Origin: Octopus bimaculoides
Lineage: Eukaryota
Reading direction: 5' to 3'
Length of the DNA stretch: 64,000 nt
NCBI RefSeq assembly: GCF_001194135.2
Contig: NC_069001.1
Coordinates: 27,200,246-27,264,245 of the forward strand
Shown here: positions 2,096-61,501 of the stretch, piece by piece
Position numbering within the stretch: position 1 is the first letter of the stretch
Layout of the letters: each line of letters starts with the position of its first letter
The notes under the pieces: generated by a model
Told to the model about the DNA's origin: nothing
Database searches by the model: none
The model's input: the letters and a program-made list of their open reading frames with translations, nothing else
Program-made: the position numbers and the translations under genes

Positions 2096-2128
<33 letters not shown>

Positions 2129-2186
2129 GTTTATGTATTCGTTTTGCAAGATTCTTGATGTGAAATCATGTGTTGTAACAGATATT

Positions 2187-2417
2187 GTTGTATTTGGGGA
2201 TGGTCATGTTGCCAGTTTGACTGATCGTTAGTCAGGAAAGACACACAAATAAGAAAGAAGAAAGAAAAGGACCACTGATGAGGTCACATATGTGTGACGA
2301 AAGATCTCTGGCCGAAATACGATTAATGTAAAATAAAGCTGAAGCAAGCAAATTAACGCCAAATATATAGTGTGTTGTATTGGCTAAACTGGCAACATGA
2401 CCATCCCCGAATACAAC
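2187..2417 (+). mobile_element. 231-bp element with 32-bp terminal inverted repeats and an internal hammerhead fold (Penelope pLTR-like)
   Basis: 2187-2218 is the reverse complement of 2386-2417 (31/32 match). The 3' end abuts (TA)n and another (TA)n lies about 60 bp upstream. Confidence 0.7.
2272..2311 (+). ncRNA. Minimal type-I hammerhead ribozyme (canonical core)
   Basis: CCA-CUGAUGA-G-GUCACA[UAUG]UGUGAC-GAAA-GAUCU-C-UGG. Stem I is CCA/UGG, stem II is 6 bp, stem III is the palindrome AGAUCU, and the CUC cleavage triplet ends at 2308. Confidence 0.75.
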
Positions 2418-5690: not shown

Positions 5691-5924
5691 TATATTTATC
5701 CGTCTATCATTTCTCTGTCGATGTATCGATCTAACTACCAAATGACACACACACACATATACAAAATATAAATATCTGTATGTGTTTGTATATATATATA
5801 AATATATATATATATATGCAGATATGTGTGTGTGTGTCTGTGTATACGCATATATCTTTTACATGCACGTATGTAAGTACAATTGCATATATGTAATATT
5901 TCGATCGAATTCATTACATTTCAG

Positions 5925-6252
5925 AAAGCTGACTTAGCTGTTGCTGGTATGTCCATTACATACAAACGCGAAAAAGTTATCGACTTCACTAAACCATTCT
6001 TGAACCTTGGCATTACCATATTATACAAGAAACCGATGAAAAAACCACCCAAGTTATTCTCGTTCCTCTCTCCTCTTACTTCGGAGGTATGGGTATATAT
6101 CATCGCCGCCTATCTTGTTGTCAGTTTTATGCTCTACATTATTGCGAGGCTAAGTCCCTACGAGTGGTATGAATCCGGATCGGATGAACTGGATAATCAA
6201 TTTACTGTTTTAAATAGTTTGTGGTTTACCATAGGTTGCCTTATGCAGCAAG
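5925..6252 (+). CDS. GRIK2-like: Kainate-type iGluR, exon C (end of S1, M1, M2 pore loop, Q/R site)
   Basis: Acceptor TTTCAG|AAA and donor CAAG|GTAAGC, 328 nt, phase 0/1. [37 protein letters not shown]...[36 protein letters not shown]...[19 protein letters not shown](G). ITY.REKVIDF and LFSFL.PL are kainate-type. Confidence 0.98.
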
Positions 6253-6814
6253 GTAAGCGTTCGACATTTTATTAACTTTGAGTTTTTGGTACCTTGATTC
6301 CCTTTTCCTTTATACATAATAATTTTGGTCATGTTTCAATTCAAAACGGCAGAGCCCTCCATCTAAAAATGAAGAGTTCGGGCCGAAATTGTATGCATAT
6401 TTCTTCTTATCACAGCACATTATATATATATTTTCCCTTTTAAAATTTATCTTCCTCTGTATTGGATTTTGTCAAAACTAACCACCAGTAGTTTTCTCTC
6501 CAATTCTATTAATAATATCATATTTGGTATGTCGTTAGTAGAACGCAAGTACTGTAAAGTCGAATGTAAGCTCCCTGAGGCATGTATTGACGACCGCTTT
6601 TCGTATCCTCGTTGTAGTAACTTCAACCTTATTACGTAGCTGTAATTAATTATCAAGGAATGCATAGCGTATATTCCAAACAATTTTCTTCCGACAGTAT
6701 TGTACCCCTGAACGATAAACAACTCTAATCTTAGTATTCTTGTGGCTGAATACATTAAATCAAGTACCTAAAATTGCTCGTTATTCCATTGTAATTTACA
6801 GCGTACAGCTAAAG

Positions 6815-16734: not shown

Positions 16735-17220
16735 ATGCATTCAAAAGGCGTTTATATTTTGTGATAAAGAATGACTCTTTACTAATGAGCTGATTACAGG
16801 TTGTATCGTCCCTGAAATGATAGGGGGGGGGGAAATTCTGAAGCTGAGTTGTTTGTTATTGGCGCAAATGTCGATGTTTTCGCTGAATGCTATTTTTCTG
16901 TTTTCCGGAAATTTGATCTGGGATCTGTGCAGAGCCATCCTTTAACGTAGACTGTTTTTTGGTTTGGCCTATGTATTGCTCTCGACACCCAGAGCAGGTT
17001 AATACACATATCAGGTTCTCCGAAGCATATGCGAAGTTGCTTTTCACTGTGAAACGTTGACTCTGTTTATCACCTCTGAACGGAAGCCTATTACCATTCT
17101 CTCCATTAATATCCGTTGTTTTGAAGAGATCTACTAGAATGGATCCCTCTAGCGCATGATCCGCGCTGTCTGAGGAGTAAAACCTTTCAGTGAGCATTTT
17201 GCACCATCGCTTTGTCACAA
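16735..17220 (-). pseudogene. Penelope-like element, GIY-YIG endonuclease remnant
   Basis: SENLICVLTCSGCREQYIGQTK, then after a frameshift HRSQIKFPENRKIAFSENIDIC, then after another KESFFITKYKRLLN. These correspond to the N.IY...C..C...YIG.T, H and E..FI....LN motifs of PLE endonucleases. Confidence 0.85.
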
Positions 17221-18116
17221 AGGGCGTTATTGAGTCACCATATAGATATTCCTGCGCTGTCTTGCGTTTACCTAGCTATCTGCTGTTTAAAACCTAGTTT
17301 TATTGATAATTCTTTCAGAATTCCTGTTTTGTTATTCACTCATTAACAAAACGCTTCTTGCAATAAATACGTCTGAATTAAAAACTTTTTTATTGGTCCT
17401 TAATATACAACTGCGGATCTCTAATTTACTATATTTCTTGCGTAGACCCTTCCCCTCTCACAAAAAGAACAACAACCTTACATGGAACCGCTACGGTTAT
17501 ATGGAATTCAATTCAGAACCACTAAAGTAGTCGCTTCATATTCTGGCAATCAACAGGAAAGTCAACATATTTGTGTCATAAACGCTGCTTATGTTATACG
17601 TTGCTTCGAAGCGTTCTGAAAGAACGTATCAGTGGTTTGGGAATTGTTACACTCTATCCTTGGCTTATTGAATGTTAGACAGCTATTTGTATTTGCAAAT
17701 ATAAATTTCAGTTGATGCAAGCACTTATTCAATCGCATGTGTTGTATTCAGATAATAGATGGAAAAATAACTCTAAGATTAGGCTATAGCACGCATGCGA
17801 AATAAACAGAATGGGAAGATTATTTGCAATATATGAAGTGAATGCTGTTTAACATTACTAACGCTGAAATGCATTGCTTTGATAAAAGTACTTTACACTG
17901 TTAAGATTGTACAGCAAGGAAACGGGAGAACGAAGTATCATACTGAAGGCCGGAAGCATGTTATCGATGTGTTATTATGAATGTTTTTCTTTCTCATCCT
18001 ACACCTGCTTTTAACCTCTTAACACACATTTTTTTTTTCAATTTCCATAAACAAATATATTTTTTTATTATATATTTTGAATCTTTAAATAAGGAAGAAT
18101 AAATACACAAGTTATT

Positions 18117-18942
18117 TGGATCTTTTCCCTTTGAACGGCAGATCGAGAAATTAATTTTTTGTAACTAAACATTTGCAAACTTCGGAAACTGGTAGAATGT
18201 GTCATATAAAATATCTTTTACTCTTAGTGTTGTCGAGAAAAGTTTATAGTTTCAAAGTTATTTCGTGTTAAAGTAGTCGTATTTCGGTAATTTCAACCAA
18301 TCAATGACGTGTGTTCAGCTGAATAAAATTACTGCCGTTGTTTTTCAGCAACAACTATCGGCGGTGTATATTTCGTTTGTCACTGTTATTTATGACATCG
18401 TTTGTGTCTTTGTACTGGTTTTAGCTTTAGAGTTTTATGGTTAGGGTTTTAGGGTTAGGGTTGGGGTGTTAGTGTTAGAGTTACGGAAAAAAGTGAAAAA
18501 TGAAGAAATTATAGGGGGAGGGAGGCAAAAAAGTATTTCCGAAAATAGTACCTGAACAAGAGGAAAAGAAAAACTAAAAGCAGTAGAAATGCATGAACGA
18601 TTGTGGTAAACATGCTCCAGATACACTCGTTTATTCATACAAACATAACTGAGATGAAATATGTCATAAATAACAGTGACAAACGAAATATACACCGCCG
18701 GAAGTTGTTTTTGACAAACAATAGCAGTAATTTTATTCAGCTCAATCGATGTCATTGATTGGTTGAAATTACCGAAGTCCGACAACTTTAACACGCAATA
18801 TATTTGAAAATGCAGAATTTTCTCAACAACGCCAAGAGTAAAAGATGTTTTATGTGACACATTCTACCAGTATACGAAGCTTGAAAGTGTTTATTTACAA
18901 AAAATTAAGTTTTCGATTTGCCGGTCAAAAGGTAAAGATCCA
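18117..18942. mobile_element. 826-bp foldback/MITE with about 282-bp inverted arms and a TTAGGG-like spacer
   Basis: 18117-18398 aligns end to end with the reverse complement of 18661-18942 (roughly 80-85% identity by eye). Termini are TGGATC...GATCCA. The spacer contains TTAGGGTTTTAGGGTTAGGGTTGGGG. Confidence 0.88.
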
Positions 18943-21277
18943 GTTATTTTCTATCAGTTATGATTTATTCGTAAGTTACTGTTTGTTAATGGTAGAAAAC
19001 AGGAATAACATCATGAATGAAGTATTTCGGGTTAGCAATAAGTGACACATGCCTCAGAGTACAGTGAGCGTATATTTTCGTTCATATATATATTAACTAG
19101 ACATTTCTGAACGAAAATATACGAGATAATATGTTAAGAGGTTAATTCTTCTCGGCCTCCCATCCAACCTTTTTATTCCTCTAACATGCCCTCACCCATT
19201 TCTTTTCCACTCCCCCCACTTTTCTTCTTTGTCTCTTATCCAATTTCTATTTCCTTGTACTTTCTGTCTGAGTGCAAAGGTCTCGTTGTCTTGCGTTCAT
19301 CATTTGCAGACAGTTTCTCAAACAAAGAATATGGCAAACTGCCGTTTTATTTTCATGTTTCTTTCTTGTAAATTTTAATATAGAAAAGGGGCTTTGACAG
19401 AAACGTTGGACATTTTACTCTACAATTTCACTCTTCTATCTCTATAGCGTTTCTAGAATCTTTAGAGCAATCTCTCTAACATGTTGTGTGAATTGACGTT
19501 GAAACAAGTGGATGTTACCGTTCATAGATGCAAGATTAATATGTATTACAACGACATACATTTGCAAGACCACGAATAATTTCTTCCGAGTGCGTAAATA
19601 TTTTAAATGGTGTAGCAATCCTAGTATAATTTTGGTTAAGTTTTGCTTTTATTGAATACGTAAGACGGAAGAGTGAAACAGATACATGCACAATCGTTGG
19701 TGATAAAGATAATTGAATTGGTTGCGGTTATTGGTGAGCAAACAATTTGAATATTAGCAGTTATATACACTAATTACGACTAGAATTTATTTTATGTATA
19801 TGTGTAGGTGGGGGGGGGAAATTTCTAAATGTTTATGAAAATAATAATATGAGTTTGGCTTACTAGAAGATTTATCTCGGGCAGATATTTAGCTGTATCG
19901 CATCACTTAACTCGTATGTTTTTTGGTGAATTGAAAAAATATTATAATAATATTAAAATGCGTGAGAGAATGTATGTATCAGACATCTATTTTCAGTCGC
20001 CACGTCTCTCCTTTTAAGTGTTGATGTATGGAACATACTCAGATTTGTATGTACCCTAACAATCAGGCTGACAAATATATAAGTATTTGGTAATCTGTGT
20101 ACATATCTGGTCATACACATACATGCATACAAGCACGAACCCAGTAACTTAAAGATAACACAATTAGCAGTTTCACAAGGGCTTTGAATATGGTCATTAT
20201 TTAGTGCCATGTGAATAAACGAAGAGTCTAAATGAAAGATTAAATCAAATGAAATTTATAAGGATGCAATGAACAAGGAAAGGTATTTTCTGTAAGGTAA
20301 CCCTCTTAAACCTTCCCCTACCACCAGAAAAAGGAAAACAGTTCGAAAAGCGGTGTATGGTCCATATGGCTGGCCGCTGACAAATTTGTTCCGCAAAATA
20401 TGGATATTTTAACCGGTTCCTGCTGTTCTGTCAGCATTATCCTGCGTTTGAGAATAAATTATTTCCTTACCTGTATCTTTCATCTTTCAATACATCTCTG
20501 CGCTTCTAAATATGCAAACTTTGTTTGTTTACATTTATCGCAATTTGAATTTTATANNNNNNNNNNNNNNNNNNNNNNNNNNNNNNNNNNNNNNNNNNNN
20601 NNNNNNNNNNNNNNNNNTATATATATATTTTTTTTTTTCACACATACATAGTTTCAAACATGTATGCTGAAATGTATACCTATGTATCTATGCGCATATA
20701 TATGCGTGTATGCGGATGCTTGTGTACATACCCGTAAGCGTATGTATGTATAAAGGTGAGCCGTTCCGTGTCCACCACAAACGTTTTACTTTTTCTGATT
20801 TTGTATGTTGGGGACTACATTATGGAGTATAAGCTATATTGAAGATAGTAGGGAGTAGATTTCTTTGTTATTACTTTTTTGCTGAGGGATACAGGAAGAG
20901 AGAGAGAGAGAGAGTAGAAGCCAAATACAGAGCTTAACTCTTAATTATGGTGATGTCTAAAAGCATATTAATTTCTATAGACTGAATGCTGTGATGCTGA
21001 TTATGGCACTTTAATTTGAAGTGTTCGTAAATGAAAAGAATTAATGGACGTGTTTAATTGCAACTGAAATGAATTATGAAACTAATAATAGAATTAAAAT
21101 AAAGGTCGATGGAGACACAAAGAGAGAGAGAGGGGGAGAGGGGAAGATTAAAAGAGAAAAAGGGAGATAAATGCTGAGTGTTTATATTAGAGAACAATGC
21201 ATCAACGCTAAAGATGATATTCAACTTAGCGTTGTATTAGATTTTATTTTAAATACTTTTAATTTTTAATGATTCAT

Positions 21278-21435
21278 GAAGGCAGCGAGGTGGCTATGTC
21301 GTTCGCAAGCCGGACATGTCGACTCTGCCATTCATCCTTTCTGTATTGATGAAATAAGCACCGGATGAGTATTAAAGTCGATGTAATCGAATAGCCCACC
21401 CTCTCCAGCCAACATTTCGGGCCTTTTGCCTGTAA
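21278..21435 (+). mobile_element. SINE family A, internally deleted copy
   Basis: GGCAGCGAGGTGGC head joined to GTCGACTCTGCCATTCATCCTTTC...GTCGATGTAATCGAATAG. Confidence 0.65.
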
Positions 21436-21765
21436 GAGAAAGTTTACATTACTCATACATTTAAAAGATTATTTCTTCCTGTCAAGATGTAGATTTTGTT
21501 GTTTCGATTGACATCAGATATAGACAAAAGATATCAGAGAAAATCCATCTTTCAATACATGTTTTTTTTTTTACTTTTTTCGTCAGTATATATATAGATA
21601 TGTATAGTATTCTATGTGTCATTAACTTCTTAAGATGATACATTGATTAATGTTATCTCTGTTGTTAAACACCTATCATGCCATAGGGTGTATGTGACCA
21701 ACGGGAAGCTTTCCCTACAAATTAATAAATTTGATTTAAAGAACGTCATATATATATATATATAT

Positions 21766-21975
21766 TACGGAGATGTACTTGCATAGCAAGTGACCTGATC
21801 TGAGATCGTGTGCTAGAATGAAAACAATTGCAGCGTGGAAGGTGTTTATAAGCCATTTAAGAAACACACAAAAACCATTAGATTCACTTCAACATTTAAA
21901 TTTGATTTGTGTCAAAATATTTTCGTCGCTTTGACACCGCGACCTGTTCACTGAAAAAATTCTGTGCTGCATATC
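21766..21975 (-). mobile_element. About 210-bp (TA)n-abutting repeat carrying a hammerhead fold (Penelope pLTR-like)
   Basis: Same layout as the 2187-2417 element: a hammerhead, about 150 nt of tail, then (TA)n at about 21749-21765. Confidence 0.6.
21912..21954 (-). ncRNA. Minimal type-I hammerhead ribozyme, G3-C8 core variant
   Basis: UCA-GUGAACA-G-GUCGC[GGUGUCAAA]GCGAC-GAAA-AUAUU-U-UGA. Stem I is UCA/UGA, stem II is 5 bp, stem III is the palindrome AAUAUU. Confidence 0.65.
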
Positions 21976-22127
21976 TTTCTGTATATAAGTATATAGTTAT
22001 AAAAATATAACTATAATTAGATGCTACTGGAAATAACCAGCGCCTGTGCTAGAAGTAGATGTCAAATACCTACAATCCACTCTAAAATTTGTTCTCTATA
22101 TTCAACCACAGGTCGAATATAGAGAAC

Positions 22128-22713
22128 AAATTTAATTTTAATGTGACCTCATCACTCCACATAATCTTTGTTGGAAAGTGTGCATCTTCTACACATCGTG
22201 CTGAGTACTACTCGAAATACTATAGTCTTCGGTTTGGATCATCGTCATTAATAGTATGGACTAATCTTGAAATGTAAGTTTTCCCTTGACATTGCTTCAA
22301 AATGCGTTGGGTAGACGATTTTGAAATACCTATCTCATGACTCGCATGCTACACAGATTTTCTTGGATTTTGGTGGTACGTTTACAGCACTCCTTCTTGC
22401 TTTGTGGGGTTTGTCGGTTCGTGGTCTTCCGGAACGCTTCTTGTAGACATTCTGAACAGTTCCATCGGCTCTAAACTTATCTCTAATTCGAGTGATGGTA
22501 AGTCACTTTGGTGGATCTGTTTGGAACTCGCTCCTAAACTGTTTTTGCACATCAGCTGCGTTTTTACACTTCCAATAGCATTGTAGAATGAATTTTCTTT
22601 CTTCAAAGCCCAGTCTGCCATCATTAATTCCAAAGGGTTTAATATGGAAAGAAAAATGCATCAATTGAGTTATCAGCTGCTAAAGGGTGTATACATTTTT
22701 TTGGAACACCCTA
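22128..22713 (-). pseudogene. Second decayed Tc1/mariner-superfamily transposon (one terminus plus N-terminal half of the transposase)
   Basis: Minus strand reads CYWKCKNAADVQKQFRSEFQTDPPK*LTITRIRDKFRADGTVQNVYKKRSGRPRT, then after a frameshift [23 protein letters not shown]...[10 protein letters not shown]...[16 protein letters not shown] (HTH, GRPR-type motif, first catalytic D). The terminus is TA|TAGGGTGTTCCAAAAAAATGTATACACCC at 22713. Confidence 0.85.
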
Positions 22714-23590
22714 TATGTATATATGTGTGAGGGGGCTAAGTTTAGTCCAGCGGGTGAGGCTGTATATTTCAATTATCTAACTTTCAAGAGATGAAAATAA
22801 AACGCTAAACTGCAGAATATTAAAATGCGAGCTACATTGTAACCAGCAGAATAAACAGGAATGGTAAAATTTATCTTGTTTTCACTTGATGGGTGAAGGT
22901 ATCTTAAAAACCAAAATAAATATTTCAATAATACATAGAATTGCGTTTCAAGGAAGTGTTTAGTAAACCTGAACGCGGTTACCTTCACAGGGTGGCACCG
23001 TAGAAACTAAATAATCTTCTATGTAAAATATTAGATAACGACGTTTCTCATGAATGTATGAATGCATGAAATGCTATTATTCATGATAACTGCAACAGAA
23101 GAGTAGTTGAGAATTGTATTCAGACATCAGCTGCCACTGCTTTGAAATCCATTTTTCGTATCAATAACAATAATACTATGTGAAACGCTTCTGGTATTAC
23201 ATAGGTGAGTTTCAATTGGTTAGTTGCACATACGCATATATATATATATATATATATATAGGATTTAACAATAGAAATTTTCGAATATGAGAAAATATGT
23301 ATTCAAGACATATATTGGAAAATTGTTATATACGTTGATGGATTATCTAATGATGTCATGATGTAATGTTCTAATGTTGTAATGCATTGATGCATGCTAG
23401 TTGCATGTTTGATTCATGTTTGAATCATCCACATCATTATTACAAAACTAGGAATATGATTATTAAGTTACTGCTATTGATACTGACGATTATAAACATG
23501 CATATGAGATAATGATGACGAGAATAATATAAACATAATGCTCATACTATTCTCAACATTATTATCTCATAAACTTATAATAATAATAAT

Positions 23591-56913: not shown

Positions 56914-57139
56914 GATTCTGATGTCCCAACATATAAAAAAATGGCAAACTTTATGCAAAGTACCACACCGTCTGTTTACGTCTCCTCTTCGCGAGAGGCA
57001 GTGCAGCGAGTTCTCAAAGAAAATTACGCTTATCTTGGAGAATCAACATCAATTGATTACCAGGTGCAAAGAAACTGCCAGCTTATGCAAGTTGGCGGTT
57101 TGCTGGATTCCAAAGGATACGGAATAGCCACTCCAAGGG
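56914..57139 (+). CDS. GRIK2-like: Kainate-type iGluR, exon E (S2)
   Basis: Acceptor TTTTTCAG|GAT and donor AGGG|GTAAGT, 226 nt, phase 0/1. DSDVPTYKKMANFMQSTTPSVYVSSSREAVQRVLKENYAYLGESTSIDYQVQRNCQLMQVGGLLDSKGYGIATPR(G). Confidence 0.97.
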
Positions 57140-57399
57140 GTAAGTTACACAGTTTCTGGTCTTACTTTACAAACTACTCTTCCTCTTCGCCTTCCATTTC
57201 TGTGTTAATAATAAAAACAGTAACGAGAATTGAGATTTAGACAAGTAAAGAACGACAGCAATTAGTGGACAGCGTAATCGCAGGCAAATTTATTTACATC
57301 ACTTTAGAATTCCTGTTTCTAACGCTATGAAATTGTACAATATTTAACTGTGGCTCATTTATACACGCACGAACACACACACATACTTACAAACATACA

Positions 57400-61462: not shown

Positions 61463-61501
61463 TCATCGACGATTTCGGATTTGATTAATCCTCATCAGTG
61501 A
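61463..61501 (-). ncRNA. Degenerate hammerhead-like motif
   Basis: UCA-CUGAUGA-GGAUU[AAUCA]AAUCC-GAAA-UCGUCGA-UGA. Core, stem II and stem I are intact, but the stem III/NUH segment is not canonical. Confidence 0.4.

What the first reader, a model, noticed from the sequence alone, without database searches (positions are those of the whole stretch)
21766..21975. Natural G3-C8 core-swapped hammerhead in a second, unrelated repeat
Seen: on the minus strand the core reads GUGAACA instead of CUGANGA, so C3 and G8 are both changed, to G3 and C8. The rest of the architecture matches the 2272 ribozyme: short stem I, extra G before stem II, stem II closed GUC.../...GAC, GAAA, 6-nt palindromic stem III (AAUAUU), H17, stem I'. 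The primary sequence otherwise differs, and the tail again ends at (TA)n. Established: positions 3 and 8 form a Watson-Crick pair in the active hammerhead and the G3-C8 swap restores activity. Inference: a compensatory double change implies selection for catalysis. Standard CUGANGA searches would miss this family. Together with the other copies it suggests a little-described set of microsatellite-targeting, ribozyme-bearing short retroelements in octopus. The UUU cleavage triplet predicts slow cleavage.
Basis: partly seen in the sequence, partly recalled or inferred. Interest (0 to 1): 0.85.

Follow-up and report, generated by a model that had tools for sequence, protein, structure and literature searches.

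The report
Hammerhead-like motif with swapped core pair
A single 43-base stretch in an intron of an octopus-like genome has every hallmark of the small hammerhead ribozymes carried by Penelope-like retrotransposons, except that its core C3-G8 pair is flipped to G3-C8; no natural example of this flip turned up in the literature searched, but one solitary copy cannot show that it works.

Summary
The motif is there exactly as described, on the minus strand at 21954..21912. It reads UCA | GUGAACA | G | GUCGC-9 nt-GCGAC | GAAA | palindrome AAUAUU | U17 | UGA.

It shares all published hallmarks of Penelope-like-element (PLE) "minimal" type-I hammerheads with the canonical copy at 2275-2311. Chance is unlikely. 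The window holds only 4 scaffolds of this shape; one has the canonical core and one the G3-C8 core (expected 0.0007; 0.012 with a relaxed scaffold).

It is not decayed transposase coding sequence. The neighbouring mariner-like fragment ends at 22130.

- No second copy was found in the window, in a protein-space search, or in two contig collections, so "repeat" and "jointly fixed G3/C8" are untested.
- No reverse transcriptase and no tandem partner lie nearby.
- Helices I and III are very weak, and a 9-bp competing hairpin takes 22-94% of the predicted ensemble.
- A (TA)n run within 200 nt occurs by chance 28% of the time here.

Published experiments show that C3G+G8C partly rescues hammerheads, including a PLE one. 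Natural U3-A8 covariants are already known.

Verdict: probably a solo relic of a PLE-type hammerhead lineage with a swapped core pair. It is a plausible new variant of a known kind; activity and selection are unproven.

The parts
21912..21954 (-). Hammerhead-like motif, type I, PLE 'minimal' architecture, with G3-C8 in place of C3-G8. Predicted cleavage is between 21915 and 21914.
   Evidence: Read directly. It is one of two descriptor hits in the window. It scores 61.8 bits with the two-sequence covariance model, which was trained on it. Chance expectation is 0.0003-0.012.
21945..21951 (-). Core GUGAACA (G3 U4 G5 A6 A7 C8 A9).
   Evidence: It differs from CUGANGA only at positions 3 and 8.
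21925..21944 (-). Unpaired G (21944), then helix II GUCGC/GCGAC closed by G10.1-C11.1, with the 9-nt loop GGUGUCAAA.
   Evidence: The probability of G10.1-C11.1 is 0.05-0.76, depending on the flanks folded.
21915..21924 (-). GAAA, the 6-nt palindrome AAUAUU (helix III only as a dimer), and U17.
   Evidence: The double-hammerhead dimer evaluates to -14.6 kcal/mol against a dimer MFE of -25.6.
21909..21937 (-). Competing hairpin GUGUCAAAG / UUUUGACAC (arms 21937-21929 and 21917-21909). It is incompatible with helices I and II.
   Evidence: It is the MFE of the 56-nt segment at -10.6 kcal/mol, against -7.0 for the hammerhead fold, with P=0.94. P falls to 0.22-0.30 in longer contexts.
21766..21969 (-). 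Putative insertion unit carrying the motif near its 5' end. It has no unusual overall structure.
   Evidence: It lies between the TA-rich stretches. Fold z-score is +0.41. There is no other copy in the window and no translated relatives.
21748..21765 (.). (TA)9 run at the 3' side of the unit.
   Evidence: Such runs occur about every 744 nt in this window.
21971..22018 (.). Degenerate TA-rich stretch at the 5' side of the unit.
2275..2311 (+). Canonical sibling: CUGAUGA-G-GUCACA/UGUGAC-GAAA-palindrome AGAUCU-C17-UGG, the same architecture.
   Evidence: Chance expectation is 0.0007 per window. Helix II P=0.997.

Best explanation
The motif is a solitary relic of a Penelope-like-element (PLE) type minimal type-I hammerhead. 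It was probably left by a 5'-truncated or non-autonomous PLE-derived insertion whose source already carried the core pair flipped from C3-G8 to G3-C8.

In such elements the hammerhead sits in the pseudo-LTR. Helix III is only a short palindrome, so two copies must pair. Helices I and III form between molecules, and helix II forms as a hairpin within each. The RNA is then cut 3' of H17, here U at 21915.

The G3-C8 pair keeps the tertiary Watson-Crick contact that organises the U-turn, so partial activity is plausible.

This particular copy is probably inert today, for four reasons:
- It has no partner copy in 64 kb.
- Its helices are 3 bp (helix I) and all A-U (helix III).
- It has a strong competing hairpin.
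- It lies antisense in an intron of a glutamate-receptor gene.

Shown: the sequence architecture, its improbability by chance, and its independence from the neighbouring transposon. Inferred: the PLE origin, the fixed swap in a source lineage, and any catalysis.
For: Architecture:
- The architecture is identical to the canonical copy at 2275-2311.
- All four features that Cervera and de la Pena list as hallmarks not included in their descriptors are present. These are a nucleotide between A9 and 10.1, G10.1-C11.1, palindromic 15.2-16.2, and a long helix II with a short helix I (PMC4209133).

Chance:
- There are only 4 scaffolds in the real window: one canonical, one G3-C8 and two with 4 mismatches.
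- Expectation for G3-C8 is 0.0007 strict, 0.012 relaxed, and 0.0003 in 3000 shuffles.

Context:
- It is not transposase remains. Logan contig L001 aligns with 22702-22130 only, and nothing from its 3' half matches 21400-22130. No Pfam domain is found in any minus-strand frame of 21600-22100.

Biochemistry (literature):
- C3G+G8C is the one rescuing double mutant in the U-turn region (PMC9901934).
- It partly restores a PLE hammerhead (PMC11167929).
- Natural 3-8 covariation (U3-A8) exists in PLE and other hammerheads.
- Most PLE hammerheads occur as solo motifs from truncated copies.

Inference: two independent neutral hits landing exactly on positions 3 and 8, with complementary bases, while the stems and the other nine core bases stay intact, is about 1 in 500 of two-hit core outcomes.
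Against: - Only one copy exists in everything I could search.
- There is no reverse transcriptase on the minus strand between 21750 and 17000. The only PLE-like trace is a GIY-YIG fragment 4.8 kb away.
- There is no second hammerhead nearby for dimer formation.
- The competing hairpin has P=0.22-0.94.
- The hammerhead dimer is 11 kcal/mol above the dimer MFE.
- Helix I is 3 bp, helix III is A-U only, and the UUU triplet is a poor substrate (general knowledge of the NUH rule).
- Rfam gives no hit, though it also misses the canonical copy.
- The descriptor was written after the fact. The number of windows the first stage read is unknown, and genome-wide about 15 chance G3-C8 hits would be expected at 0.0003 per 60 kb.
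Confidence: 0.55

Rival explanations
1. Chance look-alike: an A/T-rich stretch next to a microsatellite that happens to contain a G+C hairpin, GAAA and a cheap AATATT palindrome. It has no ancestry in a ribozyme.
For: - It is a single copy.
- The whole unit has no special fold (z=+0.41).
- The strongest local structure is a different hairpin.
- Hits with any two core mismatches are expected 0.069 times per window.
- At 0.0003 per window, a 2-3 Gb genome would hold about 15 chance G3-C8 hits.
- The descriptor is post hoc.
Against: - Only 4 scaffolds exist in the real window and two of them carry a working-type core.
- Expectation for GUGANCA is 0.0007-0.012.
- Features not needed for a generic hammerhead but typical of PLE hammerheads are shared with the canonical copy 19.7 kb away: the extra G and the GUC...GAC closure. 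Strict-feature hits occur 0.0007 times per shuffle.
Confidence: 0.2
2. Dead copy of a canonical PLE hammerhead that picked up C3G and G8C independently after insertion, without selection.
For: - Solo PLE hammerheads are mostly truncated, decaying copies (PMC4209133).
- This copy has no partner and sits antisense in an intron.
- The neighbouring transposon is heavily decayed (85% identity, many stops).
Against: - This requires two transversions at exactly the two paired core positions, giving complementary bases. Meanwhile 5 bp of helix II, GAAA, the palindrome and the other core bases stay intact.
- By simple counting that is about 1/495 of two-hit core outcomes (inference).
- Only two hammerhead-like motifs exist in the window to draw from.
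Confidence: 0.1
3. One reading: this locus is itself a working, selected ribozyme of an active microsatellite-targeting retroelement family.
For: - The 3-8 pair is kept.
- The swap is partly active in a PLE hammerhead.
- TA-rich sequence lies on both sides.
- PLEs of the Naiad and Neptune types favour microsatellites and occur in Octopus.
Against: - There is no partner for the obligate dimer, no tandem copy, no reverse transcriptase and no second family member.
- The helices are weak and there is a competing hairpin.
- The (TA)n flank has P=0.28 by chance.
- PLE hammerhead cleavage is not needed for insertion in vitro.
Confidence: 0.1

Closest known systems
Minimal type-I hammerheads of Penelope-like elements (Cervera and de la Pena 2014, PMC4209133; Lunse, Weinberg and Breaker 2017, not readable here)
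   Same: - Type I topology.
- Unpaired nucleotide between A9 and G10.1.
- G10.1-C11.1.
- Helix II longer than helix I.
- Helix III reduced to a palindrome, so that two copies must pair.
- Mostly solo copies scattered in invertebrate genomes.
   Different: - The core reads GUGAACA instead of CUGANGA.
- No family, pseudo-LTR or RT-EN reading frame could be tied to this copy.
Natural U3-A8 core covariants (Perreault et al. 2011, PMC3088659; Cercyon PLE of Schistosoma mansoni, about 1300 hits, PMC4209133)
   Same: - A Watson-Crick pair is kept at positions 3 and 8 through a change on both sides.
- The variant is missed by CUGANGA descriptors.
   Different: - Those are C-G to U-A, and are seen in many copies.
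- Here the pair is flipped to G-C and is seen once.
- I found no report of a natural G3-C8 hammerhead in the searchable literature.
Engineered C3G/G8C double mutants (Martick and Scott 2006 and Przybilski and Hammann 2007, both cited only via other papers; PMC9901934; Anolis Poseidon PLE, PMC11167929)
   Same: The core is identical, and it retains partial cleavage activity, including in a PLE hammerhead.
   Different: Those are laboratory constructs in well-folded ribozymes. This is a genomic sequence with much weaker helices I and III and a UUU cleavage triplet.
Non-LTR retrozymes of animals (Cervera and de la Pena 2020, PMC7229834; Li et al. 2026 preprint, 10.64898/2026.07.22.740005)
   Same: A short non-coding unit of about 200 nt with a type I hammerhead, thought to be mobilised by PLEs.
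   Different: - Retrozymes are tandem repeats that yield circular RNAs.
- This is a single unit with no tandem neighbour and no rod-like fold (z=+0.41).
Microsatellite-targeting PLEs (Naiad, Neptune; Craig et al. 2021)
   Same: TA-rich flanks. Naiads occur in Octopus and prefer (TA)n.
   Different: - Naiads were reported to lack hammerheads even with relaxed descriptors.
- No Naiad or Neptune reading frame is linked to this copy.

Membership tests
Hammerhead ribozyme (any type) | Core C3 U4 G5 A6 N7 G8 A9 | tested here: not met
   The core is GUGAACA. Positions 3 and 8 both differ; U4 G5 A6 A9 are kept.
Hammerhead ribozyme (any type) | Watson-Crick pair between positions 3 and 8 (C-G, or a covarying pair such as natural U-A) | tested here: met
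   G3-C8. The pair swap is tolerated experimentally.
Hammerhead ribozyme (any type) | G12 A13 A14, A15.1-U16.1, and H17 not G | tested here: met
   GAAA at 21924-21921, U16.1 at 21916, U17 at 21915.
Hammerhead ribozyme (any type) | Three helices around the core | tested here: inconclusive
   - Helix II is 5 bp, helix I only 3 bp, and helix III exists only as an intermolecular A-U palindrome.
- The hammerhead fold is -7.0 against an MFE of -10.6 kcal/mol.
- Helix II probability is 0.05-0.76.
Hammerhead ribozyme (any type) | Match to the Rfam hammerhead covariance models | tested here: not met
   No hit at gathering score or at E<=10. The test is uninformative, because the canonical copy at 2275 also fails.
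Hammerhead ribozyme (any type) | Site-specific self-cleavage | not testable with these tools
   This needs transcription of dimeric constructs, ideally with PLE protein.
PLE minimal hammerhead (min-HHR) | Unpaired nucleotide between A9 and 10.1, and G10.1-C11.1 | tested here: met
   G at 21944; G21943-C21925. The hallmarks are listed in PMC4209133.
PLE minimal hammerhead (min-HHR) | Palindromic 15.2-16.2 / loop 3 allowing a dimer | tested here: met
   AAUAUU at 21921-21916.
PLE minimal hammerhead (min-HHR) | Many copies per genome forming consensus families with compensatory changes | tested here: inconclusive
   There is no other copy in 64 kb, in translated searches or in the metagenome and viral collections. 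The host genome itself was not available.
PLE minimal hammerhead (min-HHR) | Location in a pseudo-LTR next to an RT / GIY-YIG reading frame (at least for some copies) | tested here: not met
   No Pfam domain in three frames of 17000-21750 on the minus strand. There is a GIY-YIG fragment only at 16739-17080.
Non-LTR retrozyme | Tandem repeats of a 170-400 nt unit, each with a hammerhead | tested here: not met
   No tandem or dispersed second unit.
Non-LTR retrozyme | Circular RNA products | not testable with these tools
   No transcriptome data were accessible.

The most novel reading that the evidence does not exclude
The copy is a member of a so far unreported natural hammerhead lineage in cephalopods in which the core tertiary pair is fixed as G3-C8. 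It would be carried by PLE-derived short elements and be invisible to CUGANGA-based descriptors and Rfam. It would be the first natural example of the flip that until now has only been made in the laboratory. A weaker extension is that such non-canonical cores explain why some (TA)n-targeting PLE clades appear to lack hammerheads.
Probability: 0.3. Interest if true: 0.6.

Novelty: new variant of a known kind. Interest (0 to 1): 0.4.

Why it matters
If a family with a fixed G3-C8 core exists, three things follow.
- The one double mutant that rescues the hammerhead U-turn in mutational scans would also have been found by evolution.
- It would add a second kind of natural 3-8 covariation to U3-A8.
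- Surveys of ribozyme-bearing retroelements that anchor on CUGANGA would be undercounting.

It would not change how hammerheads or PLEs are thought to work. As a single unverified copy, it is a lead and not a result.

Tried and rejected
1. Rfam, at gathering score and at E<=10, finds no hammerhead. It also misses the canonical copy, so this is uninformative.
2. Decayed transposase coding sequence is rejected. The DUF4817/mariner-like fragment aligns with Logan contig L001 only down to 22130, and its 3' half has no match near the motif.
3. Looking for other copies failed everywhere:
   - self-BLAST
   - a covariance model of the two motifs, with filters off
   - a six-frame translation searched against 5.8 billion proteins
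   - exact look-up of ten neighbouring ORFs
   - contig look-ups for P0006 and P0007
   - an exact pattern in the metagenome and viral contigs
4. A controlled pattern, with S at positions 3 and 8, run in the viral contigs gave four equal classes (37/32/27/24). I therefore did not spend the last metagenome scan on it.
5. A linked PLE was not found. There is no RT between the motif and the GIY-YIG fragment.
6. tRNA/SINE head: none found.
7. The third CUGAUGAG...GAAA at 61498-61473 has no acceptable helix I or III in type I or type III register, and the descriptor and model do not pick it up.
8. Lunse et al. 2017 and Przybilski and Hammann 2007 could not be read.

Full report
**What is there**

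On the minus strand the sequence reads 5'-UUUUCA GUGAACA G GUCGC GGUGUCAAA GCGAC GAAA AUAUU U UGAC-3'. In hammerhead numbering this is:
- helix I 5' strand UCA (21954-21952)
- G3 U4 G5 A6 A7 C8 A9 (21951-21945)
- one unpaired G (21944)
- helix II of 5 bp closed by G10.1-C11.1, with a 9-nt loop (21943-21925)
- G12 A13 A14 A15.1 (21924-21921)
- the palindrome AAUAUU (21921-21916)
- U17 (21915)
- helix I 3' strand UGA (21914-21912)

A (TA)9 run follows at 21765-21748, and a degenerate TA-rich stretch precedes at 22018-21971. Outside the motif the two units share no similarity beyond shuffled controls.

**Is it more than chance?**

I wrote a descriptor with these requirements: helix I of at least 3 bp; a 7-nt core with up to 2 mismatches; 0-1 extra nucleotide; helix II of at least 4 bp; GAAA; a 4- or 6-nt palindrome starting at A15.1; and H17 not G. 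It finds exactly two sites in both strands of the window, the canonical one and this one.

In 3000 dinucleotide-preserving shuffles the hits per window are 0.0007 (no mismatch), 0.0057 (one mismatch), 0.069 (two mismatches) and 0.0003 for G3-C8.

A control that keeps the real sequence is more telling. With any 7-mer allowed at the core position, the window contains only 4 scaffolds. Their cores are canonical, G3-C8, and two with 4 mismatches. By composition the expectation for GUGANCA is 0.0007. With a much looser scaffold (68 sites) it is 0.012. The descriptor is post hoc, and I do not know how many windows were read upstream, so I do not treat these as formal P values. Even so, a pure coincidence is unlikely.

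**What it is not**

Upstream on the same strand lies a decayed DUF4817/mariner-like transposase (Pfam E=3e-12). Its relatives include a Logan transcript contig, L001. L001 aligns at 85% with 22702-22130, and through its terminal inverted repeat with 22681-22722. The homology stops at 22130, and nothing from the 3' half of L001 matches 21400-22130, either as DNA or translated. The motif is therefore not eroded transposase coding sequence. No tRNA-like head is present.

**What it resembles**

Cervera and de la Pena (PMC4209133) describe the minimal hammerheads of Penelope-like elements. [quoted passage not shown] They keep a conserved G10.1-C11.1 and have a palindromic 15.2-16.2 / loop 3, so that two copies form the active double hammerhead. 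Activity in vitro is low, and most copies are solo motifs from truncated elements. Both window motifs meet all of these points.

The same paper, and Perreault et al. (PMC3088659), report natural covariation of the 3-8 pair to U3-A8. The flip to G3-C8 is known from experiments:
- In a complete pairwise mutational scan, C3G+G8C was the only rescuing double mutant in the U-turn region (PMC9901934).
- In the Anolis Poseidon PLE hammerhead each single mutant was dead and the double mutant partly restored cleavage. That ribozyme needed the PLE protein, and cleavage was not required for insertion in vitro (PMC11167929).

I found no report of a natural G3-C8 hammerhead in three literature searches. 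The searchable library is incomplete and two key papers could not be opened.

**What could not be shown**

The central claim, a compensatory change fixed by selection in a repeat family, needs other copies, and none could be found:
- Self-BLAST finds nothing except TA-rich matches.
- A covariance model built from the two motifs, with the 3-8 pair modelled, finds only its two training sequences; the next best hit scores 13.7 bits.
- A six-frame translation of the unit has no relative among 5.8 billion proteins.
- Neighbouring ORFs are not in the collection.
- An exact pattern of 23 specified bases has no match in the metagenome or viral contigs.

The host genome is not in any collection I could scan, so absence here says little about the genome.

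Two other points weaken the reading. No reverse transcriptase lies between the motif and a GIY-YIG nuclease fragment at 17080-16739 on the same strand. The (TA)n flank is weak evidence, because the window has 80 (TA)>=5 runs, and a random position has one within 200 nt with P=0.28.

**Folding**

Loop II plus the first base of the helix II 3' strand (GUGUCAAAG, 21937-21929) is complementary to UUUUGACAC (21917-21909). That second arm covers 16.2, 16.1, the cleavage-site base and the 3' strand of helix I.

- In the 56-nt segment this hairpin is the MFE (-10.6 kcal/mol against -7.0 for the hammerhead fold), with probability 0.94 against 0.05 for helix II.
- With longer flanks helix II recovers to 0.35-0.76 and the competitor falls to 0.63-0.22.
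- The double-hammerhead dimer is 11 kcal/mol above the dimer MFE.
- By contrast, helix II of the canonical copy has probability 0.997.
- The whole 210-nt unit folds no better than shuffles (z=+0.41). The 2272 unit has a 33-bp inverted repeat and z=-9.4.

Helix I (3 bp), helix III (A-U only) and a UUU triplet all predict poor cleavage.

**Most likely explanation**

This is a solo relic of a PLE-type hammerhead-bearing insertion whose source lineage already had G3-C8 (confidence 0.55). The argument for a pre-existing swap is an inference. Two neutral hits landing on exactly the two paired core positions with complementary bases, while helix II, GAAA, the palindrome and the other core bases stay intact, is roughly 1 in 500 of two-hit core outcomes. 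Only two hammerhead-like motifs exist in the window.

The copy itself is probably inactive. It has no partner for the obligate dimer and weak helices. It also lies antisense inside an intron of an ionotropic glutamate receptor gene (exon at 5883-6272 +, Pfam Lig_chan).

Rivals are a chance look-alike (0.2), a canonical copy that mutated twice after insertion (0.1), and a currently working, selected ribozyme at this locus (0.1).

**Novelty and score**

PLE hammerheads that act as dimers, solo copies, natural 3-8 covariation and PLE microsatellite bias are all published. Only the G3-C8 form would be new, as a variant of a known kind. With one copy and no functional evidence I score interest at 0.4. 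The decisive step is a genome-wide search of the source assembly for relatives, with a count of the states at positions 3 and 8.

Noticed in passing
window 2128-2417 (+), flanks 2098-2127 and 2418-2432: The canonical minimal hammerhead (2275-2311) sits in a 290-nt unit inserted between two (TA)n runs. The unit is closed by a 33-35-bp inverted repeat (2184-2218 / 2386-2422) that makes it fold far better than shuffles (z=-9.4). A run on both sides within 200 nt is expected by chance only 5.6% of the time.
   Followed up: partly
window 61473-61498 (-): A third CUGAUGAG-hairpin-GAAA, flanked by (CA)n/(TA)n and short inverted repeats. No acceptable helix I or III exists in type I or type III register, and G would sit at position 17. 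My descriptor and the covariance model do not pick it up.
   Followed up: partly
window 22130-22722 (-): The 5' half of a decayed DUF4817/mariner-like transposon with its terminal inverted repeat. It is 85% identical to Logan contig SRR23076801_9639 and is truncated right after the 'WSDE..KLN' motif.
   Followed up: yes
window 22085-22133: A 23-nt-arm, 96% complementary hairpin with a 3-nt spacer starts exactly where the transposon homology ends. Its origin is unknown; it may be a breakpoint foldback or the end of another element.
   Followed up: no
window 16739-17080 (-): [quoted passage not shown] Its distant relatives carry PF01541. No reverse transcriptase was found next to it.
   Followed up: partly
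window 5883-6272 (+) and probably 56941-57237 (+): An exon of an ionotropic glutamate receptor (Pfam Lig_chan, Lig_chan-Glu_bd). A second ORF has an iGluR-like sequence but no Pfam hit. If both belong to one gene, most of the window is intron, and the motif under study is antisense to the gene.
   Followed up: partly
whole window: There are eighteen runs of N (4479 bases), nearly all next to microsatellites. There are 80 (TA)>=5 runs, one per 744 nt. Repeat boundaries near gaps are therefore unreliable in this assembly.
   Followed up: partly
window 2268-2315 (+) and 21908-21958 (-): Rfam release 15 hammerhead models report neither motif even at E<=10, so PLE-type minimal hammerheads are outside what the curated models detect.
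   Followed up: yes
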